64,000 bases of DNA from the IMG/VR virus record IMGVR_UViG_3300017963_000190, positions 1 to 64,000 of that record; one strand, written 5' to 3'. The translations under genes and the position numbers were made by a program. Numbering within the stretch: the stretch's first letter is position 1; the number at the start of each line of letters is the position of its first letter. Positions 15,845 to 30,900 of this stretch are shown here, piece after piece. The notes under the pieces are model-generated. The model was not told where the DNA came from, did not search any database, and worked only from the letters and a program-made list of their open reading frames with translations.

Positions 15845-15858
15845 ACTGGATACACCTT

Positions 15859-16203: not shown

Positions 16204-16217
16204 TTAGAAAATCCTTT

Positions 16218-17483
16218 TCATTTAACGTGCACAATAATAGGCCCGTACACTACTAGATCCCCATTCTCTGCGCCGCCCTCACGCACTATGGATTCCGTAG
16301 CGCCAGCTAACAACTCAGTTTTGTTGTCCACGACTCGCATTCCCACCCATACTTCAGACGGAAGAGCGCCCGATCGGTAAGAGTGCACTTCCTTTTCAAG
16401 TGTATCGTGCGCTTTTACAGCCGCTTTTACCGCGGTGTTCAGACGCCACTCTAGAGGAGAGTTGGGATCTTTTGGCTCCCATTTGTGTAACACAGGTATC
16501 ATATCGCCGATGAGGTCTAATAGAGCTACTGACCGATCTTCCGTGGCCGACCGTTGTTCCTGTGCAATGCGTAGGCTCCGTTTAAGACACCTATTCTTTT
16601 CCTGAAGAGCACGTATCTCTGCTTTTTGCTTTACCAGTTTTTTGGCTGCAGACTCCTTGTCGCCAAAGACCAAGTCGCTGGATTGTAGATGGAGAATCTT
16701 ATCCTTCACGTTTTTAGGAAGACTTCGGAAGTATTGGGCGCGAGGATTAAACACGGCGGCTAGATCGTAAAGCAGCGCCTCAGCAGCATCTCTATGCTCT
16801 TCCTCTCTCCGGAGGTCTTCCTCTAGCTCTTCTACGCATTTGGCTTCTTGAGGAGATAATGCAGCACGTTCGGTTTCGACTTCATCAAGAGTCTCTGCGA
16901 TCCACCATAGCTCATACTCTAAGCGCCGCTCAGCTACACCTACTCGTACACCCATTTTTGTTATACAACGCCCCAGCTCTTTTACCGCCTCTTGTCTATC
17001 CTCGGGCAACCCTGGAATATTGGTTGTTAGCCAGCCAAGCGGACCGACCACGTTGTAGGGGTCCTCCCAATCGGCCTCCTCATCCCAATCTGGATTGCAT
17101 TTGGGGCAACAGATGCTAAATGTGAACTCGTGCTCTTCTCCCCCCGTGTCCCAAGAAAAGGTGTTTTCGGGTACCGTACCACATTCTTTGCAGGGCACAA
17201 AGCGGCACAAAGCGCAAAGAGCTCTATATTCTGCGTACTCGTTTTCGTAGGAAAGCGCATCTTTATCTAGCCCTTCTTGCCGCACCACCCCTATCTTGCG
17301 CAGGTGCTCTGCCAAAGTAGCCTGCTCCTTTTGAATGGATTCGGCCGCTTTAGACAACGAGCTAAGGTTATCCAGTAAGCGTTCGCTAAGCTCTTCCTGG
17401 CTTAAACCAGCTACGTCTTTCGTGAAGAAGGTTCGGAGCTGCACGTTGCGCAAACTACGAAGTCGGATATTACGGTCTCCCAT
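16218..17483 (-). CDS. coiled-coil/Zn-finger protein
   Basis: 421 aa. Confidence 0.75.
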   Translation of the reverse strand: MGDRNIRLRSLRNVQLRTFFTKDVAGLSQEELSERLLDNLSSLSKAAESIQKEQATLAEHLRKIGVVRQEGLDKDALSYENEYAEYRALCALCRFVPCKECGTVPENTFSWDTGGEEHEFTFSICCPKCNPDWDEEADWEDPYNVVGPLGWLTTNIPGLPEDRQEAVKELGRCITKMGVRVGVAERRLEYELWWIAETLDEVETERAALSPQEAKCVEELEEDLRREEEHRDAAEALLYDLAAVFNPRAQYFRSLPKNVKDKILHLQSSDLVFGDKESAAKKLVKQKAEIRALQEKNRCLKRSLRIAQEQRSATEDRSVALLDLIGDMIPVLHKWEPKDPNSPLEWRLNTAVKAAVKAHDTLEKEVHSYRSGALPSEVWVGMRVVDNKTELLAGATESIVREGGAENGDLVVYGPIIVHVK

Positions 17484-17496
17484 CTAAAAATCCTTT

Positions 17497-18228
17497 TCAT
17501 TTTGGCGCAAGAGAAAAACGAGACCCTTCCACAGGGAGATGGAGAGTACCCACACCTTCAAGGTTACAGCTCACACACGTAGCGTAGATACCCTTAGAGG
17601 TATTGTGCGAAGCAGCTACGGTAGAACCACACCCTACACAGCGGTAGACAAAGAGATGGTCCTTATCCACAGGGATAAAGGAATGGACACACGTGTTCTC
17701 ACATTGTCTACACTTCCACCCAGTCACCCGACCGATCAGACGTTCTCTATCCTCGGCATCCATAAGGATGTTGGACGTTACGCCACCACATTCCTCACAC
17801 ATGAGGACGTCCACTAGCCTAGGTGCCTCCTCTTCGTCATCGTCCTCTTCATCTTCACCATCTATTAGCCGCTCTCTATTCTCTAGCTCCCTCTCCTCCT
17901 CAGCATTGAGATCGATGCCCCACTCACATAAGAGTTGTTTGTCCCTACTGGTGATGTGGGTACGCTGGCACCCTTGATGACAGTCCTTGAGGATCTGTAA
18001 GAAGCAGTTGAGGTCCTCTCGGCTTTTATCCAGAGCTTTTTTCCTGTGCTCCAAATCCTCTTCTCGGTATTTGATACTCTCCATTTCTGAGGAAATCATT
18101 TTCAGAAGGTAGAGGAGTAGATACTCAGGAGCTCGGTAGGTGGACTCGGTGAAACTGCGAAGGTCTAGCCCCGAGGCTTTTACCGCGTCGAGTATTTCGT
18201 CTGATATTTTATCTGATGGTCGCGTCAT
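17497..18228 (-). CDS. Zn-ribbon protein (GLDx paralogue family)
   Basis: SGLDL N-terminus, four CxxC. Confidence 0.75.
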   Translation of the reverse strand: MTRPSDKISDEILDAVKASGLDLRSFTESTYRAPEYLLLYLLKMISSEMESIKYREEDLEHRKKALDKSREDLNCFLQILKDCHQGCQRTHITSRDKQLLCEWGIDLNAEEERELENRERLIDGEDEEDDDEEEAPRLVDVLMCEECGGVTSNILMDAEDRERLIGRVTGWKCRQCENTCVHSFIPVDKDHLFVYRCVGCGSTVAASHNTSKGIYATCVSCNLEGVGTLHLPVEGSRFSLAPK

Positions 18229-18231
18229 TAT

Positions 18232-18693
18232 TTACCGAGCCTCCTTTACCCTGGCTGGCTTCCAATTAAACCACAGGTCCGTGATGAGCTCAGGTTGCCG
18301 TACCCAATCGTCTAGTAGCTCTAAGGGGAACCTGAGGTGACCAAGCGTCCTGACGTAGGGTATCTGCCTGGCATTGACCTTCCGCCTGATGGTCTTCTCT
18401 GAGACCCCGAATTTCTCGGCTACCTGCCCGATGGTGACGTAGCGATAGCGGTACTTGGCTCTTGTTGGCATCCCTAGTAGATGGAGGACCTCGTTGAGAT
18501 GATCCGTTAGTCGGTCCCGTTGGGAGACCAGGTCATCTATTTGGTTCTCTAGCTTGTCCTCTTCTTCCTGTAATATGCGAGCGCATAATGCTAGACCTCT
18601 CGTGGACCTTTGCTGTAGCTGTTGCTGGAGGATGTTCGTCCTAATCCCCAGCTTGTCTAATACGTCCAAGGTCTCTTTTGAGAGAAGCATCAC
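18232..18693 (-). CDS. excisionase/MerR-type HTH DNA-binding protein
   Basis: TIGQVAEKFGVSEKTIRR..IPYVR..LRF. Confidence 0.8.
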   Translation of the reverse strand: MMLLSKETLDVLDKLGIRTNILQQQLQQRSTRGLALCARILQEEEDKLENQIDDLVSQRDRLTDHLNEVLHLLGMPTRAKYRYRYVTIGQVAEKFGVSEKTIRRKVNARQIPYVRTLGHLRFPLELLDDWVRQPELITDLWFNWKPARVKEAR

Positions 18694-18765
18694 TTGCCGA
18701 CTCCTTGCTGCGTCTCGAATAATTCTTTGGTCAGCCCATCGAGTAATTGGGTTTCATTGTGGCTA

Positions 18766-18794
18766 ATATTAAGCGGCCTGTATGACGATGTCAA
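18766..18794 (-). promoter_or_regulatory. sigma70-type promoter heading the 18.7-kb operon
   Basis: TTGACA-N17-TAATAT. Confidence 0.7.
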
Positions 18795-19243
18795 GCACAC
18801 ATAGAAAATACTTCCACGCCGCGCTGCTGAACGTCGCTTATTGGTCCCGTGAATTTCTGGAGTCTGTACTCCTGGTGATCTGCACCTGGGATAGTGCCTG
18901 GTTAATTGAATCGATGTAATGTCGCTGGAAGTATTTTACAAGATTAGGTGTGGATTCACTACAACTGATTTTTGCTTTCTTGGTGAGTGAAGTGGTGAAG
19001 GGATTACGTGTGATGTTGTCGTATATGGTGTGAGTCCCGCTGAAGTTGTGCCTCAGAAACCCGGTTCCGCTCTATACAAAATCGGCTTTTTGCGCAGGAA
19101 TGATGTGGGCTGCTGGAGCTCGAACCCTTACAGCACGTAGGTGAACGGTCCACACAAAGCTGGAGTCGGGATGATGGATGAGATTACTTGGTCCTGAGGT
19201 GCCTTGGGTTCCACCGAAGCTCTGTCATTATGCCCCAGAGCCT

Positions 19244-19350
19244 GGATCCCCTATGGATCCCCAAAATAGGCCCTTTTTGGCCATATATAGCCCTTTTACC
19301 CCCTATATAGGGGATCCATAGCGTGTTTGGGGCCTATTTGGGGATCAGAT
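19244..19350. repeat. nested inverted repeats / GGATCC cluster
   Basis: GATCCCCAAAATAGGCCC ... GGGCCTATTTGGGGATC; palindrome CCCCTATATAGGGG at 19300-19313. Confidence 0.75.
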
Positions 19351-19491
19351 CCCCTTTTATACCCCTAAAAAGGTCGGTGTTTAAGTGTGAAAATGGTGCT
19401 ACACTGTGCATATGGATCCCCAATGGAGTAGATCCGTGTACCGATACTGCACCGTTTGTGCGCAAGATTCATTCCATTCACTGGATCCCAT

Positions 19492-19571
19492 GTGACAGCA
19501 ATGTTACAGATGAGTGAATTGTGCGTAACATGGTTGTCACACTTGTAACCTAAGCGTCACACTCCTGTCAC
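19492..19571. repeat. helically phased GTNAC array
   Basis: GTNAC at 19492, 19503, 19525, 19536, 19545, 19556, 19567 and GTGAA at 19514. Confidence 0.6.
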
Positions 19572-20039
19572 ATTACACAACGAGTGAAGCACGACACAGG
19601 GAGTGAACCGTGTCAGTAACGTGTAGTGTACACTTACAGTGACCCCACACGCACACACGTATTACCTTGCAGGTCGCATGCCAACTAGGATCCCCTCGGA
19701 GGCTTCGTGTGCTGGCATGTGTGCGTGTCTATTCTTACACGCTTCACAGTTACCTCGGCTCCGGCCGGGCAGCTACGCCGGAGCCTGCGAGCTAGCAGCC
19801 ATGTGTCACGAACGGACACGGTGTGCGACAAGTAGATCTTGATATTCCTCATGCCCTCATGATACTGATGTGGAGTTACGTGTCAAATTCCGTGCACGTT
19901 CACATAAATTGCAATTAAATTCATTTCGGCTATTGACTCCGGAGCAATGATGGTAACGCGTGAGGGTTTAACCGTGTGCACGCAACGCGGAACGGATCCC
20001 CAATCATTAGGGATCCGTTCGCTGGGGATCGTGGCGGGA

Positions 20040-20339
20040 TTACTTGCGGATCAATTTGGGTGCTTGCACGTTGGTGAACCAACAATCGGGATCGTCGGGG
20101 TTGATCATGTGGCCGAAGTAACCATGGCCCCAGTAGGAATCATCCGCTTCCTGGGCCGTCATGAAAACGGTTTCGTCCGCGGCCTCGCACAGCGCGTCCA
20201 CACCCAGGCCACCGGCCTTCAAGAGCTCACGCACGCGACGCTTGTTGTGCGTGCGGCGTGCCTTGCGGCGCATGTAGCGCTGGTTGCCGTTGGTGTCGCT
20301 GTGACCGAGGCAGGGAGTCTTGCGGTACGAGCGGGCCAT
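20040..20339 (-). CDS. small basic protein
   Basis: start MARSYRKTP behind CCGGAGG. Confidence 0.8.
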   Translation of the reverse strand: MARSYRKTPCLGHSDTNGNQRYMRRKARRTHNKRRVRELLKAGGLGVDALCEAADETVFMTAQEADDSYWGHGYFGHMINPDDPDCWFTNVQAPKLIRK

Positions 20340-20560
20340 TTTATCCTCCGGGGGCGGGGTGGTTAGTATCTCCGCCCGTAGATATAAGGTAAGCATCATT
20401 GATACGTTGTCAATATGTGTGCACGAAAAAGAAAAAGAAATTAAATGCGCTTTGCCTATTGCCTTTTCGGGAAAGATGGTAACGCGTGAGGGTTTAACCC
20501 TGTGCACGTGCACGAAAAAGCCCCGAGCGTTTCCACCCGGGGCTTGCAGGAATCTCGGGG

Positions 20561-20845
20561 CTAGAAGGGGATGCCGTCCCACTTGTCCTTTTCGTACGCG
20601 TCTACGTGCGCGTCATACTCCGTGGTCTCGTAATAATACTTGGTGGCGACGTGAGCATCCTGTTCCAGCCACGCCTCTGAGAAGGCATCCACGGCGGCCT
20701 CGTAAGCCAGGGCATGCGGGCAGTCGAGGTCGTTATGGCGGAAGACGCTAGGGAACCACGCGTTATCTTCATAACACGTGCACGCGTTGTTAAGCGCGTC
20801 TAACTCAGCATCCAGCTTGGCGTTGGCGATTGCATAAGCCGTCAT
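20561..20845 (-). CDS. hypothetical protein
   Basis: CCGGAGGTAA RBS, own promoter and terminator. Confidence 0.8.
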   Translation of the reverse strand: MTAYAIANAKLDAELDALNNACTCYEDNAWFPSVFRHNDLDCPHALAYEAAVDAFSEAWLEQDAHVATKYYYETTEYDAHVDAYEKDKWDGIPF

Positions 20846-21022
20846 CTTGTTACCTCCGGTGGTTTGTGGTATCGTGGCCATGACTAGAACATAAGTCGCC
20901 TTGTTACGATGTCAAGCGCTTCGCAGAAACAAAGAAAAATAATTTTGTGGGTTGACCACAGCGATTTAATGGTAACGCGTGAGGGTTTAACCCTGCCCCT
21001 TAGGGGCGCTTGGCCCCCGGGC

Positions 21023-21217
21023 TTACTCGCCGATATCCAGCATGCCCATGATCATGGCTTGCTCGGCGCCGAGCACGTTGCTACCGCCGCACGAAGGGCA
21101 ATCGTACCCTTCCGCGTCGGGCTCCGTTCCATCGCGCGTGAACTCCGCGCAGTCGGGACAGAAGCCCACATAGTTATAGGTTGCTTCGCGATACTCGATT
21201 TCACTTACTTGCGTCAT
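21023..21217 (-). CDS. small Zn-ribbon protein
   Basis: GFCPDC..EPDAEGYDCPSCG. Confidence 0.8.
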   Translation of the reverse strand: MTQVSEIEYREATYNYVGFCPDCAEFTRDGTEPDAEGYDCPSCGGSNVLGAEQAMIMGMLDIGE

Positions 21218-21227
21218 GGCTTTCCTC

Positions 21228-21668
21228 CTAAAGGGCACCAAGGGTTGCCAGGGATACGTAGTTGCCTCCCTGGGCTGTGATGATATGGTCTAGCACGGGA
21301 ACCCCGAGGAGATCCCCGCATTGCTTCAGACGCGCAGTGAGCTCGATATCATCCCTGCTAGGGGCCGTGTCCCCACTGGGATGGTTGTGCGCGAGGATAA
21401 CGGCGGCGGCCCCAGCGATGACCGCCCCACGGAATACTTCGCGGGGATGTATCTCGACACTGCCCAGCGAGCCCATAGCCACCGTTTGAACGGCCAGGCA
21501 TTGGTGCTTGGTATTGAGATACATCACAACGAAAGTCTCTTGAGCCCGGCTGTGAAGGCCGTAGGCGTCAAGTATTTCGTTGGCGTGCTCTGCCGTACTG
21601 ATCTTGCGCTGGGCATCAATCCTGCGCCCAGTGTAGGTCACTTCCGCTTCTCTTAGAATCATGCCCAT
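21228..21668 (-). CDS. radC: RadC-like JAB domain protein
   Basis: E..V.YLNTK, HPREVF, AHNHPSGD..PS..D, VLDHII. Confidence 0.92.
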   Translation of the reverse strand: MGMILREAEVTYTGRRIDAQRKISTAEHANEILDAYGLHSRAQETFVVMYLNTKHQCLAVQTVAMGSLGSVEIHPREVFRGAVIAGAAAVILAHNHPSGDTAPSRDDIELTARLKQCGDLLGVPVLDHIITAQGGNYVSLATLGAL

Positions 21669-21847
21669 GGTCTTACCTCCGGTAGCATCTAAGATAAGCA
21701 CTATTGACAGCGTAACAAGGGCAAAAGAAAATAAAACTATTTACACTTTGGGGGTTGCGCAAAGTGAAAAGATGGTAACGCGTGAGGGTTTAACCCTGCC
21801 CAGCTACGGAAACGGCGGATCCCCGTTTGGAGATCCGCCTGATGGAT

Positions 21848-23227
21848 CTAGTCCATCAGCCAATCGGTGCCGGCCATCTCAGCCATGATCCCAAAGACGT
21901 CTTCCCACATGGTCTCCTCAGCCGACCGGTGGGAAAGGGATCCATCGCGCCCCTTGTCGTGGGCCAACTCGTGGATCATGGTCCCGAGCAACCGTTGCAG
22001 CTTGCCCGTCACCTGGCGATTGATCCGGATCTCTTTGCTCCCGTGAGAGTAGGTCCCGAGGGGGGCGTCGGGTGCCGTGAATCCGAAACACCGAATCCCA
22101 TCCAGGCGATCCCTATCGGCGACGTCGGCCAGATCCAGGAGATTGATCGCCTTGTTCCAGTTGACGCGTTCCTGGGGATCCAGGTCGGCGACGGCCACGT
22201 AGTCTCCGCTGGAATCGATCGCCTTGTTTAGGATCTCCTCGATCGTCCCGAATTTGTTGGCCAGGACCTTGCCCATGCCGTCGGGAACCACGATACCCTG
22301 CAGACCGTAGAAGGACACCTTGGTGGCTTCGTCTTCGTTGGCCACCGGCACAGCCTTGTCACCGTAGGTATCGGCGAAGGTTGCGGAGATCTGCTCACCC
22401 ACTTCCTTATTAGAGTAGCGGCAGCAACCGGCCAGACGCTTCACGTCGGGCATGTCGGATTCGAGCATACCCCAGACATTGGAGATCCAGTCTTCGTCTT
22501 CGTTGTGCGCGCAAAGGGACGTCCAGAGTTGGGCCGCGGCATAGCCGAGATCATAGTCGTCGACCATGCGGCGATCCCGATCCAGATCCAACCCACTGGC
22601 GAAATCGTAGCCCACCGCCAGCTCGGGTTTGGTGCAGACGTAGATCCCTTTGCAGTAGATGCGCCCCTTCATGTTCTGGCCAAACAGGATGGATCCCGAG
22701 TAGCCAACGCGCTGGATCTCGTGATCGGGGATCTCGATGCACCGCAGGAAACGATCCTTGTAGTCGTTCCACTGCCGTTTGGAGATCTTGATCCGCACAG
22801 TGAAATCGGACGTCGGGCGATCCCCGTAGTAATCCTGGCGACGCTTGCGCACCTTGACAGCCAGGACATCCACGCCAGCGTAATTCTTGGACGCTTCAAT
22901 GGCCGGTGTCCAGATCTCATCCCCATTCAGGAATTTGACTTCGATCCCCTGGCGCAGTAGGGCCAGCACACCCACCTTGAGACCATCGCCATGCTGGCCA
23001 CGCAAGGCGTCGTTGTCGCGCTTGGTTGACTTCCCGAGCAACCACACAGACGTGTCCAGGACACAGTCTCTGTTGGTCACTTCAAGCCATCCGTTGTCGT
23101 GGTTGTAATACGCGGGGTAGCCTTCGTCATGGCTATCCAGGGCATTTTGCATGACTTCCCGCAGTCCTTCCCATACGCTCCAATCGGGGGCGTATTCTGC
23201 GGTGATACTGAGCTCGAAACGTGCCAT
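21848..23227 (-). CDS. GHKL/HATPase-like ATPase with C-terminal HExxH metallopeptidase-like motif
   Basis: LREVMQNALD, GQHGDGLKVG; IHELAH; start moved to MARFEL because the ORF-track start runs through the promoter. Confidence 0.75.
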   Translation of the reverse strand: MARFELSITAEYAPDWSVWEGLREVMQNALDSHDEGYPAYYNHDNGWLEVTNRDCVLDTSVWLLGKSTKRDNDALRGQHGDGLKVGVLALLRQGIEVKFLNGDEIWTPAIEASKNYAGVDVLAVKVRKRRQDYYGDRPTSDFTVRIKISKRQWNDYKDRFLRCIEIPDHEIQRVGYSGSILFGQNMKGRIYCKGIYVCTKPELAVGYDFASGLDLDRDRRMVDDYDLGYAAAQLWTSLCAHNEDEDWISNVWGMLESDMPDVKRLAGCCRYSNKEVGEQISATFADTYGDKAVPVANEDEATKVSFYGLQGIVVPDGMGKVLANKFGTIEEILNKAIDSSGDYVAVADLDPQERVNWNKAINLLDLADVADRDRLDGIRCFGFTAPDAPLGTYSHGSKEIRINRQVTGKLQRLLGTMIHELAHDKGRDGSLSHRSAEETMWEDVFGIMAEMAGTDWLMD

Positions 23228-23451
23228 GTTTTGTCTCCGGTTTGTTGGTTCTCGGTCCGTGCAAATAAGATAAGCACTATTGACAGCGACACAAGGACCA
23301 CTTTGCATTTTCTCAATCTTTTTTCGGCACGGAGTTTGCAACGCGCGCACCTTATATACTGGCAGGGTTAAACCCTCACGCGTTACCATCATATTGACGA
23401 TGTCAAGTATTACAGGCAAGAAAAGCGATTTTTCTTTTTTCGCACAAAAGC

Positions 23452-23479
23452 TTGACTCTGAAACAAGGCTGCTTATATT
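23452..23479 (+). promoter_or_regulatory. plus-strand promoter of the inverted cassette
   Basis: TTGACT-N16-TATATT; RBS CCGGAGGTAA at 23511-23520. Confidence 0.75.
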
Positions 23480-23525
23480 CTATGTACGGCGCCGCAAGTT
23501 AGGGGCCGCACCGGAGGTAAAAGTG

Positions 23526-23561
23526 ATGCGAGATTGGATGTGGACCTGGCTAGGTCGGTAA
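23526..23561 (+). CDS. 11-aa Trp-rich mini-ORF MRDWMWTWLGR
   Basis: consensus phage promoter and RBS directly upstream. Confidence 0.5.
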   Translation: MRDWMWTWLGR

Positions 23562-23858
23562 ACTGGCTCACGGTGTTTACGCTAGGGCAGCGGCCACCGT
23601 GCTACTTAACCGGCAGCGTAGGGATCCAACGCGTAAAGGGATCCCGCGGTACCAGCGCTGAGACCGGCAACGTCAAAGCCCCCAACCTATTAACGCCAGG
23701 ACGCTAGCCACCTGGAGCATTCCGCTCCCGTTTCCCTTTAGGGGTGTAGGTTAAACCCTCACGCGTTACCACGAAAATTACGTTGTCAAGTATTACAGGC
23801 AAAAATAAAGGGCGCCCTTTCAGACGCCCTCAAATGCCCCGTGTTAGGAGCAAGGGTG

Positions 23859-24218
23859 CTAGGCACCCATGAGCCGTTCATAGTAAGCCTCGCGCTCCCA
23901 GGCCGCTTGCTCCCGCTCCTGGGCCACGATTTGATCGTGCAGCTTGGGGTCCTGGTTTTTCAGCGCGGACCAGTCGATACAGTGGACCTTGCCCGTGCCC
24001 TTGCAATGGGGACACGCGCGATCATAGCGACCGGCCATGTAGTCCTCCTGGAAATCGGGATCTTCCTGGGCCCACTCGCTAGCGGTCCAGGAGCCCATGT
24101 GCGCGGACGTGCGCCCGTCCCCTTCGCAGTCGTCACAGATGCGCCACTTACCAGGCAGCGTCACCTCGTAGCTGTCCCCGTCTTCGTCATAGACCGTGTA
24201 TTCGATATCCTTGGGCAT
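23859..24218 (-). CDS. DnaJ-type Zn-finger (CxxCxGxG) protein
   Basis: CDDCEGDG, CPHCKGTG. Confidence 0.75.
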   Translation of the reverse strand: MPKDIEYTVYDEDGDSYEVTLPGKWRICDDCEGDGRTSAHMGSWTASEWAQEDPDFQEDYMAGRYDRACPHCKGTGKVHCIDWSALKNQDPKLHDQIVAQEREQAAWEREAYYERLMGA

Positions 24219-24375
24219 GGTTTTTCTCCGGTGGTTGGGTTGTAGCCAGAATATAATCACTATTGACAGCGAAACAAGGGCAAAAGAAAAATAATTTTGT
24301 GGGTTGACTTCCGAGCTGGAATGGTAACGCGTGAGGGTTTAACCCTGGGAGAAGGCGGGCGCGTGCCCGCGTCTG

Positions 24376-24624
24376 CTATAGAACGCTCCACCTCCCTTTT
24401 TCGTAGAATTCGATCTCCGTGCACCCGAGCCCAGGCATCCCATAATCGTCCAAGGGCTCGAATTCCGTTTCGGGAGTGCAGACACCGGAGACGTAAACTG
24501 CGCCGTCGTCATCGCGCATACGGAAGCGCAGCGGGGCCGTGAGCCCTTCGCGCCAATTGCGGGATGCTACTCCCACACTATCCAGCGCACAGGCCATGTG
24601 CGCTTTGGTGATCTTCCAAGCCAT
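24376..24624 (-). CDS. hypothetical protein
   Basis: FRMRDDDG.VY..G..PLDDYG; GGAGGTAA RBS. Confidence 0.8.
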   Translation of the reverse strand: MAWKITKAHMACALDSVGVASRNWREGLTAPLRFRMRDDDGAVYVSGVCTPETEFEPLDDYGMPGLGCTEIEFYEKGRWSVL

Positions 24625-24636
24625 GGCATTACCTCC

Positions 24637-24921
24637 CTAGCAAAGGTCCTGGTTTAGTGCGATGCGCACGTCGCGCGCCACCTTCCGCTTCAAACGGGTA
24701 GCCGACAGGTTGTCTGCCACCCATCCCCACTCACGCACCGTATTCGCAGCCGCGTCCACCCACGCCTTGTGAGCAGGGATGCAACCGGTGGCAATGAAGA
24801 TCTCCGCCGCGGGTCGGCAGACAGCGCAAAGCTGCGCCCCTGACACGTTAAACCGCGTACGGGCGATCTCCGCCCACTGCCGCCACTCGGAACGTGCTTT
24901 GGTGATCTCGGTCGTGGTCAT
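24637..24921 (-). CDS. hypothetical protein
   Basis: CCGGAG RBS, structured leader. Confidence 0.75.
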   Translation of the reverse strand: MTTTEITKARSEWRQWAEIARTRFNVSGAQLCAVCRPAAEIFIATGCIPAHKAWVDAAANTVREWGWVADNLSATRLKRKVARDVRIALNQDLC

Positions 24922-25143
24922 GGTACTATCTCCGGTTTGATTTTGGGCGCACCTATCCCCCCAAAGGGGCTAAGGTGCGAGCCGGGAGTATTTCTCCCGC
25001 CGTAGGTAAAATATAAGTCGCCTTGTTACGAAGTCAATATAAAAAGAAAAATAATTTTGTGGGTTGCCTTTTCTCGAATCGTGGTAACGCGTGAGGGTTT
25101 AACCTATGCTCGTAGGGGATCCGAGTTGGATCCCATCTTTGGT

Positions 25144-25314
25144 TCACAGATAGAAGCGATACTCGATTGTGGGTTGGAACGATGCCCCTTTGTGGCGCAC
25201 CCTGCGTCCGTAGGAGCATTCCACTCGGCGGACTAGATCAGCGAGATCCGCATCACTGTAGAAAACCTCGCGCATCTTCCCTTGCACGAATACTCTGATC
25301 CTAATCTTGCACAT
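25144..25314 (-). CDS. small hypothetical protein (not in ORF track)
   Basis: 56 aa MCKIRIRV..; AGGAG RBS. Confidence 0.6.
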   Translation of the reverse strand: MCKIRIRVFVQGKMREVFYSDADLADLVRRVECSYGRRVRHKGASFQPTIEYRFYL

Positions 25315-25322
25315 TGGATCTC

Positions 25323-25562
25323 CTAACGGGGGTTGATCCCCATCCGATGGTTGAGATTATCCACGCGGGATTCGAGGATCCCCAGGAATACCTCTGCCGC
25401 TTCACTGTCCGCACGGTAGCCAGCTTGGCACAGCGCAGCAATGGCAGCGGATTCGTCAAGCACGGCCACGGAGTAACCGTACAACTCTTTGACTAGGGGA
25501 TCCGATACCACTGGCAAGGGCATCGTTTCCGCGAGTCGCTCTGCTTTGGGGTAGGTCGTCAT
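25323..25562 (-). CDS. hypothetical protein, probably leaderless
   Basis: ATG lies about 6 nt after the -10 box. Confidence 0.7.
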   Translation of the reverse strand: MTTYPKAERLAETMPLPVVSDPLVKELYGYSVAVLDESAAIAALCQAGYRADSEAAEVFLGILESRVDNLNHRMGINPR

Positions 25563-25709
25563 GCGTATAAGATAAGTCGCGTTGATACAATGTCAATAGA
25601 TGTAAGAAAAATAATTTTGTCTGTTGACTTTCCCGCAGCCGTTGCTACGCGTGAGGGTTTAACCGTACCTGGTAGGACGCACGCCCCCGGTTTCCCAGGG
25701 GCTACGCTG

Positions 25710-26366
25710 CTAAACAGCGCTGCGATTGATGTAATAGACGTCGTAACCGTAGTTGCGCCGTTCGTCCGCATCATTGCGCACGCCTTTACCCTGGCACCGG
25801 AAGCAAATCCCACCGGGGCCTGTGGGCTTCCCGTTCAACATGCCCGTAGTGAACGCACCCGAGCCCGCACAGCGGCGACAAGTGAAGGTCACGTTACGCG
25901 CGGCCCACACCCACTGCTTAGCCGTAGGCTCGGTCACGCCCTTGGTGCCCAGGAGATCGCGACAAGCGGCCTGGAACGCCTTTTTACTCGGCGCGTGGCT
26001 CCGGCCCTGCACTAGCGCGAACTCCCGCCGCAGGTCATCTGTGGACATCTCAGACAATTTTTTCTGCGGCTTCGCTTTGCGACGCGGGGCGGCCTCAGGC
26101 ATGGGCACGCGGTAGCCTTCGCGCTGCATATCACGCGCCGTTTCCCGCGCGTCCGCAAGCTCAGGCCCCAACTCGCGACGCTCGCGCGAGTAGACGTAAC
26201 CCTCGTGACACCCTTTCCAGTATTCAGCGTCCGCGGCAGCATCGCCCGAGGGCTTGCAATTCGCGTGATACTCGCGACCGTCGATCTTGACGACCTCGGG
26301 CGTACGCACGCCATGGTTAAAGGGCACCTTACATCCGTTGCAGTATCCTTCGCGATCGTTGGCCAT
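25710..26366 (-). CDS. Zn-finger protein (CxxCxGxG)
   Basis: CRRCAGSG..CFRCQGKG; start MANDRE. Confidence 0.8.
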   Translation of the reverse strand: MANDREGYCNGCKVPFNHGVRTPEVVKIDGREYHANCKPSGDAAADAEYWKGCHEGYVYSRERRELGPELADARETARDMQREGYRVPMPEAAPRRKAKPQKKLSEMSTDDLRREFALVQGRSHAPSKKAFQAACRDLLGTKGVTEPTAKQWVWAARNVTFTCRRCAGSGAFTTGMLNGKPTGPGGICFRCQGKGVRNDADERRNYGYDVYYINRSAV

Positions 26367-26551
26367 TTTCTTACCTCCGGTTGGTTGCCCGTAAAAGATA
26401 AGTCGCCTTGTTACGATGTCAAGCATTTTTCTTGCGGGCATCGCACGCGCGCCACCGCACAGCCCATGGTTAAACCTTCGCGCGTTACCACGAAAGCCCC
26501 CGCGTCAAGGGGATCCGTGGCGTTTTTCTGTTTTTATTTCGGATCCCCTTT

Positions 26552-26692
26552 TCAGATCCGAGACGCTGCAAAAATGGTTCCTCCCATGAAAGCCAGGAAA
26601 CGGATCCCATTTCCTGTGTGAGTCCACAAGTAGACCGCGCAGAATACCAGCGCAATCGCGAGCACAAGACGGACAACCCTATTGGTACGCAT
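26552..26692 (-). CDS. small membrane protein
   Basis: two TM segments. Confidence 0.6.
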   Translation of the reverse strand: MRTNRVVRLVLAIALVFCAVYLWTHTGNGIRFLAFMGGTIFAASRI

Positions 26693-26855
26693 GACGTTTG
26701 CCTCCGAGGATGCGCGCGGCCAAGTAGCCATTGAAAGCCACGAAGCCAACGACCCGATACCATGCCTGCACCGGATTGGAGATCCAGACGCAAAGCACAA
26801 CGACGATCAGAACGATCAGCCAAATGGCGATCAGCTTTTTGATCCACTCCCACAT
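26679..26855 (-). CDS. small membrane protein
   Basis: MWEWIKKLIAIW.. Confidence 0.65.
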   Translation of the reverse strand: MWEWIKKLIAIWLIVLIVVVLCVWISNPVQAWYRVVGFVAFNGYLAARILGGKRHAYQ

Positions 26856-26862
26856 GACGGAT

Positions 26863-27177
26863 CTACTCCCCAATGGATCCGCTAGCGGTGGCGAAGTCGG
26901 GCACCGTCGGATCCGCAAGGTCCACCGAATAGATCCCACCCATCAAATGGTGCGCGTAGGCTTTGGAGATCGGCCGGAGGATATCCTCTGCCTCCCAGCG
27001 TCCGATCTCTTCGTGATACCAGCGACCACTAGTGGAGCACAGCAGGGTGGACCCGTCACCCAAGGGGACGATAAAATCCACCGTGATCAACTCGCGGGGA
27101 TCCGTGGCGGACATGGGCGCTCCTGTCGGGATCAACTCAAGGGATCCGATGATTTCTTGCTCTGTCTGTAACATCAT
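26863..27177 (-). CDS. hypothetical protein
   Basis: GAGGTG RBS. Confidence 0.7.
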   Translation of the reverse strand: MMLQTEQEIIGSLELIPTGAPMSATDPRELITVDFIVPLGDGSTLLCSTSGRWYHEEIGRWEAEDILRPISKAYAHHLMGGIYSVDLADPTVPDFATASGSIGE

Positions 27178-27180
27178 AAC

Positions 27181-27405
27181 TCACCTCGCAATGATGGCAA
27201 CCACGCGATCCGTTCTGTAAACCGCGCGGTTCCGGTCGGATGTCCAGGAGCTTTTGCCGTAGGTGTTACCGTCCAACGTGACAGCGCTGGGCAACGTACT
27301 GTAAGCCTGGTAGCTATCACAGTACGTTTCGAGATACTTCGCGCTCCTGTCGGGGAATTCCCCGTGGCAGGTGACTGTAACCGCGTTGAGTGCCTGAGCT
27401 TTCAT
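27181..27405 (-). CDS. hypothetical protein
   Basis: start MKAQAL behind GGAGG. Confidence 0.75.
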   Translation of the reverse strand: MKAQALNAVTVTCHGEFPDRSAKYLETYCDSYQAYSTLPSAVTLDGNTYGKSSWTSDRNRAVYRTDRVVAIIAR

Positions 27406-27627
27406 AGTGTGCCTCCGATGCATAGAATATAAGTCGCTTTGATACGGAGTCAATAGGGCAGTGTCAATTTTTACGCGGAAGAAAAATCGAGAAAACACAT
27501 TCGGCGGGGTTGACTTCCGCGCAGGGATGGTAACGCGTGAGGGTTAAACCCTGTCTGAAAATAAAAAGCGGACCGGTGGTTACCTCCAAGGCCACCGGTC
27601 CGAGTTATGTTGCATTGCCCGCGGTAA

Positions 27628-27945
27628 TTATCGCATCACGAGGGCAACGCGGGGAGTAGCGCGCACCCGAGAAGCACGGGCAGCCTTGCGCGCGTTTATA
27701 CGCGCCAGATCGGCCACCGCCTGCGCTCTGTTGTGCGCGTCCGCCTGCCGTGTCCACTGGACCGCGCAAGCGTCGCGCGAAGCCTGCGGGGCGCTGGCGA
27801 ACTCTGGGGAGCACATGAGCTTAACCACGTCCTCAGCCTGCGCGGGAGTGACGGCGCTCATGAGCGCCACCGCGACTTTGCTGCTGAGAAGCATGCTGAT
27901 CAGGAATTGAACGGCTACGTCGTGGGTGGTCGGGTTGGTTGTCAT
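27628..27945 (-). CDS. hypothetical protein
   Basis: start MTTNPT behind CCGGAGG. Confidence 0.75.
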   Translation of the reverse strand: MTTNPTTHDVAVQFLISMLLSSKVAVALMSAVTPAQAEDVVKLMCSPEFASAPQASRDACAVQWTRQADAHNRAQAVADLARINARKAARASRVRATPRVALVMR

Positions 27946-28175
27946 GGCTTTTCCTCCGGTTAGTAGCGGGGTGGTTTGTCTCCCGCTGTGAAACAAATAT
28001 AAGTCGCCCTGTTACGAAGTCAATATTTTCTCGCAAAATAATTTATTTTTCTTTTTCGCGCTTGCGGGGTTGACTTTCGCGCGGGAATGGTAACGCGTGA
28101 CGGTTTAACCCAGGGGACAAAAGGGCAAATGGGGGCACCGCGTAGGCGCTCCCATTTGCGTTGTGCTGGCCGTTT

Positions 28176-28466
28176 TTAGAACGCGTCCGGTTCATACCAC
28201 CGGCTGGCATCCTCGCGACACATGAGGCTATAGGTATTCCAGCGGTGCAGACGGGGCTTGCCCGAGCAGATCCGCACGTTGGACATGTCCGAGCGCCGCC
28301 GTGCGTTGGCCGCTACGGTCTCCGCTTCCCGGTGATCGTCGCAGGGAAGGATCACCCGGTTGTCTTTGCCTTCCGACTGGCCCCACCCCGACAGGAAGGT
28401 ATCAGTGGCGGTCACGTAGAATTTGGCCTTGGGGATCTCGCGCTGGCTTTCGATCATGGTTGACAT
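28176..28466 (-). CDS. hypothetical protein
   Basis: YVTATDTFLSGWG motif. Confidence 0.8.
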   Translation of the reverse strand: MSTMIESQREIPKAKFYVTATDTFLSGWGQSEGKDNRVILPCDDHREAETVAANARRRSDMSNVRICSGKPRLHRWNTYSLMCREDASRWYEPDAF

Positions 28467-28751
28467 TGGCTTTTCCTCCGGTTGCTGGTTTCTGTCCGCT
28501 GCTAGATAAAACATAAGTCGCCTTGTTACGAAGTCAATAGAACAGTGTCGATTTTTACGAACAAAAATAAATCACTTTTCTTGCGCAAAGGGGTTGACCG
28601 CGGCGAAAAGATGGTAACGCGTGAGGGTTAAACCCTAGGGGCGAGGAGAGGAGATCCCCCCGCGGATCCTAATCCTGTTAACTGGGGATCCGAAAGGGGA
28701 TCAAGAGGGGATCTGGCTAGGGATCTGCTTTTGTATAGAGACCTTTTCCTC

Positions 28752-29318
28752 CTATTCCTGGGCTTCTGTGGATCCGATAATCATGGGATCCGTTGGATCG
28801 GGTGCGCCCAGCTCGATTACCTCGAAACCAACGTGATCCTTAAAGGCTTCGTGGCGCGCGTGGTAGCGATCCACGGATTCGCGGGAGCATTCACACTTGC
28901 GCCGGGATCCCAAGCGGCCACAAGGGCAGCTGGGGGCGCCTGCGATAAGATAAAAGTCTGTGTGATCTTCCTTGTCCCCTGCCCGCAGGATCCGCTTGTT
29001 CACGAAACCGTGGCCCACCATTTCGAGCAAGGGCCGTCTGAACTCCGGCATATCGTCAAGGTACAACGTGCCCCCGTTGGCCAGGTGGACTTCGCCGGGG
29101 TATTTCTTGCTCCCCAGCATGCCCGGATTGCTCACGGTATGGTGAGGGGCGCGCAGTGGTCCACCCCTTAGCATGGCCAGCATACGGCCAAAGCGGAGCT
29201 TACCACAGCCCACAGGGCCAACTAGCAGGATAGGCTTGCCTGCGGCCATGGCATTAAGCGCGGCCGTGAGAACGCGCACAGAGACCTTGAGACCGTTGAT
29301 TGTGGTAGTAGGGGCCAT
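28752..29318 (-). CDS. Mg-chelatase-related (ComM/YifB-like) AAA+ ATPase fragment
   Basis: GPVGCGK, PLRAPHHT, PGEVHLANGGTLYLDD.PEF, CPCG. Confidence 0.85.
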   Translation of the reverse strand: MAPTTTINGLKVSVRVLTAALNAMAAGKPILLVGPVGCGKLRFGRMLAMLRGGPLRAPHHTVSNPGMLGSKKYPGEVHLANGGTLYLDDMPEFRRPLLEMVGHGFVNKRILRAGDKEDHTDFYLIAGAPSCPCGRLGSRRKCECSRESVDRYHARHEAFKDHVGFEVIELGAPDPTDPMIIGSTEAQE

Positions 29319-29653
29319 TGCTTTACCTCCGGGTTAGTGCGGGGTGGTTAGCTTCGCTGGGTTTCTCCCGCCGCAAACAAAACATAAGCACTATTGACAG
29401 CGAAACAAGGCGAAAAAGAAAAATAATTAAATGCGCTTTAGGGGTTGACCGCGGCGAAAAGATGGTAACGCGTGAGGGTTTAACCCTTGACGTCCCGCGG
29501 GGCGAGGGGGCGCGGCCGGATCCCCTGGGCCTAATCCTGGTAATCGGGTAGGGTTAACGGATCCCCTTTGGTGTTAGTCCTAGTATCTCATTTTGTATAG
29601 AGGGTGGATCCCCAATGGGGATCCAGGCAGGTTTTGTATAGAGGCCCTTTGGC

Positions 29654-29821
29654 CTATCGGGCAGCTGAGGGCATGATCACCAGGTCGTCGGGCAGGTGAT
29701 CCCCGTAGGGATCCATGAGACGGAGCGCTTGTTTCACCGCCTGGCGCTGTCGCTGCTTGAAACGTCGCCGGGCCTTACCCTTCCCGTTGCCATTGTACTC
29801 TTTTCGATTCGTGCGGGCCAT
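29654..29821 (-). CDS. small basic protein (not in ORF track)
   Basis: 55 aa MARTNRKEY..; CCGGAGGTAAG RBS; resembles 20040-20339. Confidence 0.7.
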   Translation of the reverse strand: MARTNRKEYNGNGKGKARRRFKQRQRQAVKQALRLMDPYGDHLPDDLVIMPSAAR

Positions 29822-29847
29822 TTTCTTACCTCCGGTTGGTTGTTTGG

Positions 29848-30033
29848 TTATTTACGGAGCCCTTCTAGCCATTCCCGATCCAGCTCGTCACGGGCCACGG
29901 CCATTTCCAGGAAATCCCGGAAAGCGTCCGGCGCACCTTGGTTGTCGATGTATTCCAGGGCCAGCGCTAGCGCATCCTCACAGGATAACCCATGGTATTC
30001 TGTGTATTGATCCATGATCATTTCGGCGCTCAT
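29848..30033 (-). CDS. hypothetical protein
   Basis: AAGGAG RBS. Confidence 0.7.
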   Translation of the reverse strand: MSAEMIMDQYTEYHGLSCEDALALALEYIDNQGAPDAFRDFLEMAVARDELDREWLEGLRK

Positions 30034-30038
30034 AGCCT

Positions 30039-30299
30039 TTACTCCTTATCCACCGTTAGTGCCAGCGCCACTTCGCGGCCGTAGCCGGTGAGCCGCATCT
30101 TGATCGGGCCAAAGCTGCCCTCTTTGCGGTGGGCCAGGCCGTTGTTCACCAGGAAATCCGCCTGGTACTCTGCCAGCTCGTGGTGCGAGTAGAAAAACGC
30201 GGGCTTGCACGCGCGCTCATACTCGCCCATTTCCCGCAGGACCTTTGCCGCCGCGGTATTGCAGATCTCGTTGGCCAGTTTCGTTGCTGCCTTGCTCAT
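30039..30299 (-). CDS. hypothetical protein (possible winged helix)
   Basis: LVNNGL..LTGYG. Confidence 0.75.
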   Translation of the reverse strand: MSKAATKLANEICNTAAAKVLREMGEYERACKPAFFYSHHELAEYQADFLVNNGLAHRKEGSFGPIKMRLTGYGREVALALTVDKE

Positions 30300-30360
30300 T
30301 TGCTTTGCCTCCGGTTGAACGTACCAAGAATATAATCACCCTTGATACGTTGTCAATGGG

Positions 30361-30735: not shown

Positions 30736-30900
30736 TTGCTTGTCTCCGGTTGGTTAGGGTTTCTTGCTTCGTGTGTAAAAGATAAGTCGCTTTGTTACGA
30801 TGTCAATATAGACAAGCGCAAAAAGAAAAACAAATAAAACGCACGCAGGAGGTTGACCGAGCTCGAAAGATGGTAACGCGTGAGGGTTAAACCTAGGTAG

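What the first reader, a model, noticed from the sequence alone, without database searches (positions are those of the whole stretch)
23366..23802. Mirror-image cassette: the only plus-strand unit, with an 11-aa Trp-rich peptide and ~190 nt of non-coding sequence
Seen: two inverted copies of the element (23366, 23749), each followed by the same 19-mer TGTCAAGTATTACAGGCAA (23401, 23784). They bracket a T-tract, the promoter TTGACT-N16-TATATT, the RBS CCGGAGGTAA and ATG-RDWMWTWLGR-stop, then ORF-less sequence containing a GGATCC hairpin. The whole unit architecture is preserved in reverse. Inference: units move or invert as modules. The cargo may be a micropeptide, a Trp-sensing leader or an ncRNA.
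Basis: partly seen in the sequence, partly recalled or inferred. Interest (0 to 1): 0.7.

Follow-up and report, generated by a model that had tools for sequence, protein, structure and literature searches.

The report
Reverse-facing promoter cassette in jumbo phage
This 437-bp stretch of an uncultured jumbo phage is one backward-facing copy of the promoter cassette found in front of most of its early genes; related phages fill the same slot with different small genes, and here it holds only an 11-codon frame, so it shows how these phages shuffle genes, not a new kind of element.

Summary
The window is the first 64 kb of a 260-kb metagenomic jumbo-phage contig. Between 19.9 and 49.8 kb, 22 copies of the 22-mer GGTTAAACCCTCACGCGTTACC ("R") head a repeated cassette: R, 14 nt, a GTCAAS box, a T-tract, a sigma70-like promoter, a leader hairpin and the RBS CCGGAGGTAA. 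The unit at 23366-23802 is the only complete cassette on the plus strand.

It is not an invertible switch. Its two R copies are direct repeats, no recombinase gene was found, and assembled contigs show one orientation. In all nine related phages, the R upstream of the same gene (21848-23227, minus strand) also points away from that gene, preceded by an invariant sigma54-like GGCAC-N6-TGC motif. Behind this mirror R the relatives carry nothing, or ORFs of 20, 56, 70, 76 or 87 aa, or whole operons, usually closed by a second mirror R. One such cargo gene sits in the normal orientation in this phage.

The unit is therefore a swappable cassette in a conserved divergent slot, comparable to the PeSL cassettes of T4-type phages. 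Its cargo has no homologue, no Rfam match and no unusual fold. A 57-codon out-of-frame ORF shows weak coding signal. The Trp-sensing-leader idea is not supported. Whether the cargo is a micropeptide, a small RNA or a gene remnant remains open.

The parts
23270..23295 (-). Class II family promoter (CTTGTGTCGCTGTCAATAGTGCTTAT) of the neighbouring minus-strand gene B (21848-23227). It is divergent from the mirror unit.
   Evidence: gene B = phrog_6077
23325..23340 (+). Sigma54-type -24/-12-like motif CGGCAC-GGAGT-TTGCA, pointing toward the mirror unit. GGCAC-N6-TGC-N-ACG is invariant at the orthologous place in nine phages.
   Evidence: function not tested
23366..23387 (+). R 22-mer, proximal mirror copy (head of the plus-strand cassette)
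23401..23419 (+). GTCAAG box in its 19-mer form (TGTCAAGTATTACAGGCAA). GTCAAG starts 14 nt after R, as in 79 of 81 family members.
23420..23451 (+). A/T-tract between box and promoter. The distance from R end to the -35 element is 64 nt, in helical phase with the other units.
23452..23479 (+). Class I family promoter TTGACT-N16-TATATT, the only one of the family on the + strand in the first 65 kb
23488..23507 (+). Leader hairpin (GGCGCC...GGGGCC), placed like the leader hairpins of other units
23511..23520 (+). Canonical RBS CCGGAGGTAA
23526..23561 (+). 11-codon ORF M-RDWMWTWLGR-stop (12 codons from the GTG at 23523). It is the only canonical-RBS ORF under 55 codons.
   Evidence: codon score -0.14
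23534..23707 (+). 57-codon open frame, -1 relative to the ATG, with no usable start. It has a weak coding signal and its stop lies 6 nt before the terminator-like hairpin. Possible remnant of a frameshifted small gene.
   Evidence: no homologue
23621..23645 (.). GGGATCC...GGATCCC hairpin. GGATCC hairpins are common in the 3' regions of units in this array.
23714..23738 (+). Weak terminator-like hairpin GGAGC-ATTCC-GCTCC followed by CGTTTCCCTT
23749..23802 (+). Distal mirror R (23749-23770), spacer ACGAAAATTACGT and the 19-mer box. No promoter follows. It matches the mirror R-box that abuts a convergent terminator in relatives L030, L035 and L037, so it is the probable resident copy.
23808..23831 (-). 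Intrinsic terminator of the convergent minus-strand gene A (23859-24218), directly abutting the distal box

Best explanation
The feature is one complete copy, in reverse orientation, of a repeated regulatory cassette. This uncultured jumbo phage places that cassette in front of most genes of its early, ORFan-rich region.

Shown:
- The cassette order is R 22-mer, a 14-nt spacer, a GTCAAS box, A/T-tracts, a sigma70-like promoter, a leader hairpin and a strong RBS.
- R and the promoter are helically phased.
- The first 9 nt of R form a small palindrome that changes by compensatory substitutions between phages.
- The unit lies in a conserved 'mirror slot' upstream of gene B. In all nine related phages an R-box at that junction points away from gene B, behind an invariant sigma54-like motif. 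The cargo behind it differs from phage to phage.

Inferred:
- The resident element is the distal R-box (23749-23802), which abuts the terminator of the convergent gene.
- The 383 bp from 23366 to 23748 entered by homologous recombination between R-box elements. A circular cassette integrating at the resident R would leave exactly the observed direct R-box duplication. Its orientation would follow that of the resident R.
- This matches the mechanism proposed for PeSL cassettes of T4-type phages.
- The unit is expected to be transcribed rightward early in infection from its own sigma70-like promoter, and possibly from the sigma54-like site. The product would be an RNA of about 250 nt whose 11-codon ORF is translated.
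- The cargo is specific to this lineage. It is most probably an ORFan stub, a small gene that lost its frame, and not a conserved RNA or a sensor.
- R-box most likely binds a phage-specific protein that acts on the adjacent promoter.
For: - Array and cassette anatomy.
- Constant 14-nt R-to-box spacing in 79 of 81 elements from nine phages, with compensatory changes in the palindrome (T3/A7 to C3/G7; T4/A6 to A4/T6).
- R-to-(-35) distances cluster at 33, 44, 55, 65 and 75 nt; 41 of 44 fall at 3-6 modulo 10. This unit's distance is 64.
- Mirror R upstream of gene B in 9 of 9 phages, with GGCAC-N6-TGC invariant.
- Variable cargo in the slot: 20 aa (L036), 56 aa (L031), 70 aa (L035), 76 aa (L026), 87+25 aa (L037), empty (L038), or absent (L030, L033). 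A second same-orientation R follows in L031, L035, L036 and L037.
- The distal R-box, ACGAA...GTCAAGT...GGCAAAGAAAA plus a convergent terminator, is shared with L030, L035 and L037.
- Shuffled order and flipped orientation of homologous units between phages.
- No recombinase gene found. One orientation and no 383-bp deletion form in contigs.
- Cargo is unique in the genome and has no homologue, family, Rfam hit or fold signal.
- Weak coding signal in the 57-codon frame, which ends at the hairpin.
- PeSL precedent: PMC2839356 and PMC4122927.
Against: - No transcript data exist; no RNA run was listed. Promoter activity, the 3' end and translation are therefore all inferred.
- The relatives are distant (54-60% identity in gene B), so the insertion history is reconstructed, not observed.
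- The two 19-mer boxes are identical while the 13-nt spacers between R and box differ. One simple crossover does not explain this without gene conversion or coincidence.
- All regulatory parts of the unit are intact, and two relatives keep a conserved 20-25 aa ORF in this slot. The 11-aa ORF or the RNA could therefore be functional.
- The biochemical role of R-box is unknown.
- Assembled contigs drop rare variants, so low-frequency rearrangement is not excluded.
Confidence: 0.68

Rival explanations
1. The cargo is functional as it stands. The cassette would express an 11-aa Trp-rich micropeptide, a small RNA of about 250 nt, or both, early in infection. The RNA might, for example, read into the 3' end of the convergent gene A as an antisense transcript.
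For: - The promoter, its phasing, the leader hairpin and the RBS are all canonical and undecayed.
- Relatives L036 and L037 share a conserved Arg-rich 20-25 aa ORF with a canonical RBS in the same slot.
- A relative carries two tRNA genes as the cargo of an R unit.
- ORF-less promoter-terminator units exist at 42130-42445 on the minus strand.
- The plus-strand terminator is weak, so read-through into gene A is plausible.
Against: - The peptide and the RNA have no homologue anywhere that was searched.
- Fold energy is no better than shuffled sequence, z = +0.88 and -0.15.
- No Rfam match.
- The mini-ORF frame has a negative codon score.
Confidence: 0.25
2. The segment is an invertible, phase-variable element or an integron-like gene cassette, moved by a site-specific recombinase acting on R.
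For: - R is a 22-bp invariant, oriented sequence that bounds every unit.
- Cassette sizes of 0.4-1.5 kb resemble integron arrays, and GTTAAAC within R fits the GTTRRRY core.
Against: - The flanking copies are direct repeats, which would give excision, not inversion.
- No tyrosine or serine recombinase gene was found in the 260 kb.
- Conservation lies downstream of the putative core and not in an attC-like imperfect palindrome.
- Each unit has its own promoter.
- The orientation is fixed in 9 of 9 relatives and in the contigs.
Confidence: 0.04
3. The 11-codon Trp-rich ORF is a tryptophan-sensing attenuation leader.
For: Three Trp codons in 11 codons, and hairpins downstream.
Against: - No plus-strand gene lies downstream to be regulated.
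- There is no terminator/antiterminator pair with a U-tract.
- The Trp codons are not adjacent.
- The ORF is not conserved in any relative.
- Other units have the same leader and RBS in front of ordinary genes.
Confidence: 0.02
4. R-box is itself a promoter for a phage-directed RNA polymerase holoenzyme. The -35-like part would be CGCGTT within R and the -10-like part GTCAAS 16-17 nt downstream. The mirror unit would then be a tandem-promoter unit, and the distal R-box would be an antisense promoter aimed at gene A.
For: - The 14-nt spacing is rigid.
- The phage encodes two sigma70-family proteins and no RNA polymerase of its own was found.
- R varies in a genome-specific way.
- GTCAAA-like -10 elements are used by ECF sigma factors (from my own knowledge).
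Against: - Helical phasing with the downstream promoter fits an upstream factor site better than an independent promoter.
- R-box occurs only within the early array, not in front of other gene classes.
- The window's sigma protein has regions 1.2-4 and is not ECF-like.
- Orphan R-boxes point into terminators.
Confidence: 0.15

Closest known systems
PeSL (promoter-early stem-loop) mobile regulatory cassettes of T4-type phages (Arbiol et al. 2010, PMC2839356; Comeau et al. 2014, PMC4122927)
   Same: - A repeated intergenic composite: a terminator stem-loop, an AT-rich stretch, a strong sigma70-like promoter and a Shine-Dalgarno sequence.
- Concentrated in an ORFan-rich plastic region.
- Gene gain, loss and replacement between related phages are bounded by the cassettes.
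- A cassette flanked by two direct copies is what integration of a mini-circle would leave.
   Different: - These cassettes also carry an invariant 22-bp R element and a GTCAAS box at a fixed 14-nt distance, helically phased with the promoter. PeSLs have nothing like this.
- The phage is an uncultured jumbo phage, with no close cultured relative found by the gene B or AAA ATPase protein searches.
- One junction holds a conserved reverse-facing slot.
- Mini-circles were not tested here.
Integron gene-cassette arrays (attC sites plus the IntI integrase)
   Same: An array of short units, mostly in one orientation and each bounded by a conserved oriented repeat, with an occasional reversed unit. 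GTTAAAC in R fits the GTTRRRY core.
   Different: No integrase was found. There is no attC-type imperfect palindrome. Every unit has its own promoter and RBS. The conservation extends into the start of the next unit.
Sigma54 (-24/-12) promoters, including those reported in Pseudomonas phage YuA (cited in PMC10914365)
   Same: The motif at 23325-23340 and its orthologues match TGGCAC-N5-TTGCW. The GG and GC doublets are invariant at the correct spacing in nine phages.
   Different: No enhancer-binding protein was found; the AAA+ protein at 28752-29318 is ComM/ChlI-like and has no GAFTGA loop. Activity is untested. In six of the nine phages the motif also reads as a small inverted repeat, GCAC...GTGC.
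Leader-peptide attenuators (trpL type)
   Same: A short ORF rich in one amino acid, behind a strong RBS and followed by hairpins.
   Different: There is no downstream regulated gene, no alternative-hairpin terminator, no adjacent regulatory codons and no conservation.

Membership tests
PeSL-like mobile regulatory cassette | Repeated intergenic motif with a sigma70-like -35/-10 promoter and an AT-rich upstream stretch | tested here: met
   29 family promoters in the first 65 kb, each preceded by T/A-tracts. This unit has TTGACT-N16-TATATT.
PeSL-like mobile regulatory cassette | Associated stem-loop acting as a terminator or attenuator between units | tested here: inconclusive
   GC-rich hairpins precede most R copies, with or without a T-run. 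This unit has only a weak 5-bp hairpin at 23714-23728. Termination was not assayed.
PeSL-like mobile regulatory cassette | Concentrated in a plastic, ORFan-rich region, immediately upstream of ORFans | tested here: met
   R copies occur only between 19.9 and 49.8 kb of the 260 kb. Of the ten proteins scanned across the window, most had no Pfam or PHROG function.
PeSL-like mobile regulatory cassette | Insertions, deletions, replacements and rearrangements between related phages are bounded by the cassettes | tested here: met
   R-bounded units are in a different order in the relatives. The mirror slot holds different cargo in each phage. A homologue of the L037 slot gene sits at 20043-20339 in the normal orientation.
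PeSL-like mobile regulatory cassette | Excised cassette mini-circles | not testable with these tools
   Only assembled contigs were available, and they show no 383-bp skip.
PeSL-like mobile regulatory cassette | Host genome is a T4-type myovirus | not tested
   No near match in 50,697 phage records. T4 core genes were not examined.
Invertible DNA switch | Segment flanked by inverted repeats, with an invertase gene | tested here: not met
   The flanking R+box copies are direct. PF00589 and PF00239 are absent.
Invertible DNA switch | Both orientations present in a population or among relatives | tested here: not met
   One orientation in contigs of two runs, which may be one data set. The orientation is the same in 9 of 9 relatives.
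Integron cassette | IntI-type tyrosine recombinase and attC imperfect palindromes (R''-L''...L'-R') | tested here: not met
   No Phage_integrase-family hit. The sequence upstream of R is not conserved or paired with R.
Trp-type attenuation leader | Leader ORF with regulatory codons, an alternative terminator/antiterminator pair and a regulated downstream gene | tested here: not met
   No plus-strand gene downstream, only a weak hairpin, and no conservation.
Known structured RNA family (Rfam) | Covariance-model match | tested here: not met
   No hit at gathering score in the window. Only chance-level hits with E > 5 in 23300-23900. Fold z-scores are +0.88 and -0.15.
Sigma54-dependent promoter (23325-23340) | GG and GC doublets at the -24/-12 spacing within TGGCAC-N5-TTGCW | tested here: met
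   CGGCAC-GGAGT-TTGCA here. GGCAC-N6-TGC-N-ACG is invariant in nine phages.
Sigma54-dependent promoter (23325-23340) | Enhancer-binding AAA+ activator with a GAFTGA loop, and RpoN dependence | tested here: inconclusive
   The phage AAA+ protein is ComM/ChlI-like. The host is unknown and activity cannot be tested here.

The most novel reading that the evidence does not exclude
R-box cassettes would form a dedicated gene-capture and expression system of an uncultured jumbo-phage clade. In this reading, a phage-specific protein recognises the co-evolving 9-bp palindrome plus the constant half of R, and both controls the helically phased promoter and promotes exchange of cassettes between R sites. 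The orientation of R would then dictate the orientation of the captured unit. The conserved mirror slot upstream of gene B would be a sigma54-gated expression site for micropeptide or small-RNA cargo, including this 11-aa Trp-rich ORF.
Probability: 0.1. Interest if true: 0.8.

Novelty: new variant of a known kind. Interest (0 to 1): 0.45.

Why it matters
The mirror unit itself is probably a lineage-specific stub. Its value is what it exposes.

- A clade of uncultured jumbo phages, seen in at least nine metagenomic lineages, organises its early ORFan region with a composite cassette stricter than the PeSLs of T4-type phages. The cassette has an invariant 22-mer, a 14-nt spacing, helical phasing with the promoter and genome-specific compensatory changes.
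- These features predict an unidentified DNA-binding regulator.
- The mirror slot is a natural experiment. It shows that cassette orientation follows the orientation of the resident repeat, and that the same junction is repeatedly reused for different cargo.
- This gives a concrete, testable model of how large phages acquire and express new small genes. It also supplies well-defined strong promoter and RBS parts.
- A conserved sigma54-like motif in a phage early region would also be unusual if it proves active.

Tried and rejected
- Near and distant DNA searches of 50,697 phage records with the array, the unit and R-box gave no match or only chance matches.
- R pattern scans of viral contigs gave no hit.
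- Searches for relatives of gene B and gene A in viral contigs found none for gene B and one unrelated-architecture locus for gene A, L009.
- The homologue search for gene A returned only the query itself.
- The 57-codon frame has no homologue and no Pfam or PHROG family.
- The cargo compared with the phage's own genome and with about 100 kb of relatives gave only chance hits.
- Slot proteins of the relatives compared with this cargo showed no similarity.
- Rfam at gathering and at permissive thresholds gave nothing.
- ARAGORN found no tRNA in the window.
- No RNA sequencing run was listed.
- Contig lay-down showed only repeat-induced joints from other units. It showed no inversion and no 383-bp deletion, and the two runs may be one data set.
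- A T7-like promoter was considered, because R resembles the T3 promoter core TTAACCCTCAC (recalled from memory). No single-subunit or multisubunit RNA polymerase gene was found, though the PF00940 control search did not ring.
- The phage AAA+ protein was considered as a sigma54 activator. It is ComM/ChlI-like and lacks GAFTGA.
- Simple tandem duplication was rejected. The repeat covers only R+spacer+box, and the 13-nt spacers differ.
- ORF length of the 57-codon frame is not significant (P = 0.5-0.7). Only its codon score is mildly unusual (P = 0.02-0.04).

Full report
**Context.** The window is the first 64 kb of a 260,067-bp virus contig from a sediment metagenome, estimated at 74% complete. 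Nearly all long ORFs are on the minus strand. The genome has 37 tRNA genes at 208-258 kb and two sigma70-family genes, one at 40287-41177. No phage RNA polymerase gene was found. No near relative exists among 50,697 deposited phage genomes.

**The observation.**
- The 22-mer GGTTAAACCCTCACGCGTTACC (R) occurs 22 times with up to 3 mismatches, against 0 expected. All copies lie between 19.9 and 49.8 kb. Eighteen are on the minus strand and four on the plus strand, at 23366, 23749, 26468 and 41305.
- The 19-mer has two exact copies, at 23401 and 23784.
- The promoter TTGACT-N16-TATATT (23452-23479), the RBS CCGGAGGTAA (23511-23520), the 11-codon ORF (23526-23561), the GGATCC hairpin (23621-23645) and a weak terminator-like hairpin (23714-23728) are all there.

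**What the repeated unit is.** Aligning all copies gives a cassette read in the direction of the genes: the hairpin of the upstream gene, YAG, R, a 14-nt spacer, a GTCAAS box, A/T-tracts, a promoter, a leader hairpin, CCGGAGGTAA and ATG.
- The promoter comes in two forms. Class I is TTGACAnCGTAACAAGGCGACTTATNTT. In class II the 17-mer TTGACAGCGTAACAAGG is present as its reverse complement.
- There are 29 such promoters in the first 65 kb, and only the one at 23452 is on the plus strand.
- Of 33 canonical RBS-start pairs, this is the only one on the plus strand. It is also the only one followed by fewer than 55 codons.

The finding is therefore the single complete cassette in reverse.

**Relatives.** A metagenome scan with the R pattern and a protein search with the neighbouring gene B (21848-23227; phrog_6077, GHKL-ATPase-like) recovered at least nine related phage lineages with 54-60% identity in gene B. 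They are L026 with L014-L023, L030, L031/L032, L033/L034, L035, L036, L037 and L038, plus one contig without DNA.
- All carry R-family elements with a constant half, TTCACGCGTTACC, and a 14-nt spacer to GTCAAG in 79 of 81 cases.
- The first 9 nt form a palindrome that is uniform within a genome and differs between genomes by compensatory changes: GGTTAAACC, GGTTTAACC, GGTATTACC, GGCTAAGCC. Position pair 3/7 is T-A in 62 copies and C-G in 13. Pair 4/6 is T-A in 55 and A-T in 17.
- The distance from R to the -35 hexamer is quantised at about 33, 44, 55, 65 and 75 nt. In 41 of 44 cases it falls at 3-6 modulo 10, and this unit's distance is 64.
- A stem of 4 bp with a 1-nt loop cannot fold. The symmetry and the phasing therefore point to a protein bound at R-box on a fixed face of the helix relative to RNA polymerase. 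This is an inference; the protein is unknown.
- R-box is absent from deposited phage genomes.

**The mirror slot.** In every relative, the region upstream of gene B has the same order: the gene B promoter, a T-tract, an invariant GGCAC-N6-TGC-N-ACG block, a GC-rich stretch, then an R-box pointing away from gene B.
- The GC-rich stretch is a covarying hairpin in several relatives and is shortened here.
- The invariant block matches the sigma54 -24/-12 consensus, TGGCAC-N5-TTGCW, and points the same way as the mirror R. In this window it is CGGCAC-GGAGT-TTGCA at 23325-23340.
- Genome-wide, the motif count here is what chance gives. The evidence for it is its invariance at the orthologous place in nine diverged phages.
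- The phage AAA+ protein with a faint Sigma54_activat hit is ComM/ChlI-like and lacks GAFTGA. The sigma54 reading therefore remains a lead. Sigma54-like promoters have been reported in phage YuA (PMC10914365).

**What sits behind the mirror R.**
- L030: nothing. The R-box abuts the terminator of the convergent gene.
- L033: nothing. A short stretch leads to a normal-orientation R.
- L038: empty. Two mirror R copies lie 75 nt apart.
- L036: a cassette with a 20-aa ORF (MSKNDTNRKLAVRRAMRLIRR), then a terminator and a second mirror R.
- L037: an 87-aa gene plus a homologous 25-aa ORF, the same terminator and a second mirror R, then a convergent gene.
- L031: a 56-aa ORF and a second mirror R.
- L035 and L026: ORFs of 70 and 76 aa, followed by longer reverse blocks.

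The L037 87-aa gene is homologous to the gene at 20043-20339 here, which is in the normal orientation. R-bounded units are also in different orders in the two best-sampled phages. The distal R-box here (23749-23802: ACGAAAATTACGT, then TGTCAAGTATTACAGGCAA, then AAATAAAGGG and the terminator) resembles the R-box that abuts a convergent terminator in L030, L035 and L037. That makes it the probable resident copy, with 23366-23748 the probable insertion.

**Mechanism.** The pattern is a cassette flanked by direct copies of the repeat, oriented as the resident repeat is, at a junction reused for unrelated cargo.
- This is what integration of a circular cassette by homologous recombination between repeats would leave.
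- It is the model proposed, and partly demonstrated, for PeSL cassettes of T4-type phages (PMC2839356; PMC4122927).
- A site-specific switch is unlikely. The flanks are direct repeats, no tyrosine or serine recombinase gene was found, the orientation is fixed in all relatives, and contigs from the two DNA runs that hold the sequence show one form with no 383-bp deletion. Those two runs may be one data set, and contigs hide rare variants.

**The cargo.** The 222 bp after the RBS are unique in the genome.
- They have no match in phage records, in about 100 kb of relatives, or in the protein collection.
- They match no Pfam, PHROG or Rfam family.
- They fold no better than shuffled sequence.
- The 11-codon frame has a negative codon score.
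- A 57-codon frame (23534-23707), shifted -1 from the ATG and lacking a usable start, scores 0.14. That is above the 99th percentile of off-frame windows. Against dinucleotide shuffles its codon score gives P = 0.02-0.04, while its length alone is unremarkable.
- The stop of that frame lies 6 nt before the terminator-like hairpin, which is the usual stop-to-hairpin arrangement in the other units.
- My reading is that a small ORFan that lost its frame is somewhat more likely than a functional 11-aa peptide or small RNA. The second is not excluded: the regulatory parts are intact, and L036 and L037 keep a conserved micro-ORF in this slot.
- The Trp-leader idea fails for lack of a regulated gene, a proper attenuator and any conservation.
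- No RNA data could be found.

**Verdict.** The cargo ideas are unproven or unsupported. The feature is a new variant of a known kind, a PeSL-like regulatory cassette with an added R-box, and it sits in a conserved divergent slot.

Noticed in passing
window 19070-66093 (e.g. 28729, 29591, 29632, 32261, 35099, 40041, 41513, 41538, 49919): A second motif, CTCTATACAAAA, has 13 copies (up to 1 mismatch), 12 of them on the minus strand. Most sampled copies lie shortly after stop codons. The motif is also present in relatives L015, L020 and L023. Its function is unknown.
   Followed up: partly
window 42064-42480, minus strand: Three tandem sigma70-like promoters. The first two are followed by ORF-less stretches of about 190 and 80 nt that end in strong intrinsic terminators. 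These are candidate small-RNA genes.
   Followed up: no
all R units in the window and in loci L026-L038: The distance from R to the -35 hexamer is quantised at about 33, 44, 55, 65 and 75 nt (41 of 44 at 3-6 modulo 10). The R-to-box spacer is 14 nt in 79 of 81 elements.
   Followed up: yes
first 9 nt of R, in the window and in relatives: The palindrome GGYWnWRCC is uniform within each genome and differs between genomes by compensatory changes: GGTTAAACC, GGTATTACC, GGCTAAGCC. This suggests co-evolution with a binding protein, concerted evolution, or both.
   Followed up: yes
window 23325-23340 (+); L026 470, L030 9910, L031 7888, L033 8001, L035 2386, L036 2282, L037 5791, L038 418: A sigma54-type -24/-12-like motif is invariant upstream of the mirror R in nine phages. 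A second copy precedes a noncoding region of about 700 nt in a relative (L016 453 / L026 3538).
   Followed up: partly
L036 about 1990-2055 and L037 about 5200-5280 (minus strand of the loci): A conserved Arg-rich micro-ORF with a canonical RBS and a shared terminator lies in the mirror slot: MSKNDTNRKLAVRRAMRLIRR (20 aa) and MSDTQKQHIRMFQRIAARLIRSRRR (25 aa).
   Followed up: no
L015 821-970: In a relative, an R cassette promoter drives tRNA-Asn and tRNA-His ahead of a protein gene. This phage keeps its 37 tRNA genes at 208-258 kb instead.
   Followed up: partly
window 20386-64778 (promoter list): The 17-mer TTGACAGCGTAACAAGG upstream of the -10 element CTTAT occurs in either orientation. This gives two promoter classes: 22 class I and 7 class II.
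   Followed up: no
whole genome; densest at 20-40 kb: GGATCC is 2.4-fold over expectation (162 against 69), and 43 of the copies lie in 20-40 kb, many in 3' hairpins. GAGCTC is 3.7-fold over expectation (252 against 69).
   Followed up: no
window 26468-26489 (+) and 41305-41326 (+): Two further R copies point against the array, upstream of gene 25710-26441 and of the sigma-factor gene. The first is conserved, as a degenerate copy, in relatives L014 and L035. Neither has a complete promoter behind it.
   Followed up: partly
window about 1-20000 versus 20000-32000: G+C content rises from about 0.50-0.52 to about 0.56-0.58 where the R array begins.
   Followed up: no
L009 5507-5598, 7416-7496, 9941-10002: An unrelated phage contig that encodes a 45%-identical homologue of gene A has its own repeated 21-mer (GACCTACCGTCCGTCGGTCCG) about 13 nt upstream of a conserved TTGACA promoter block. 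This is an analogous but non-homologous arrangement of an upstream element plus a promoter.
   Followed up: no
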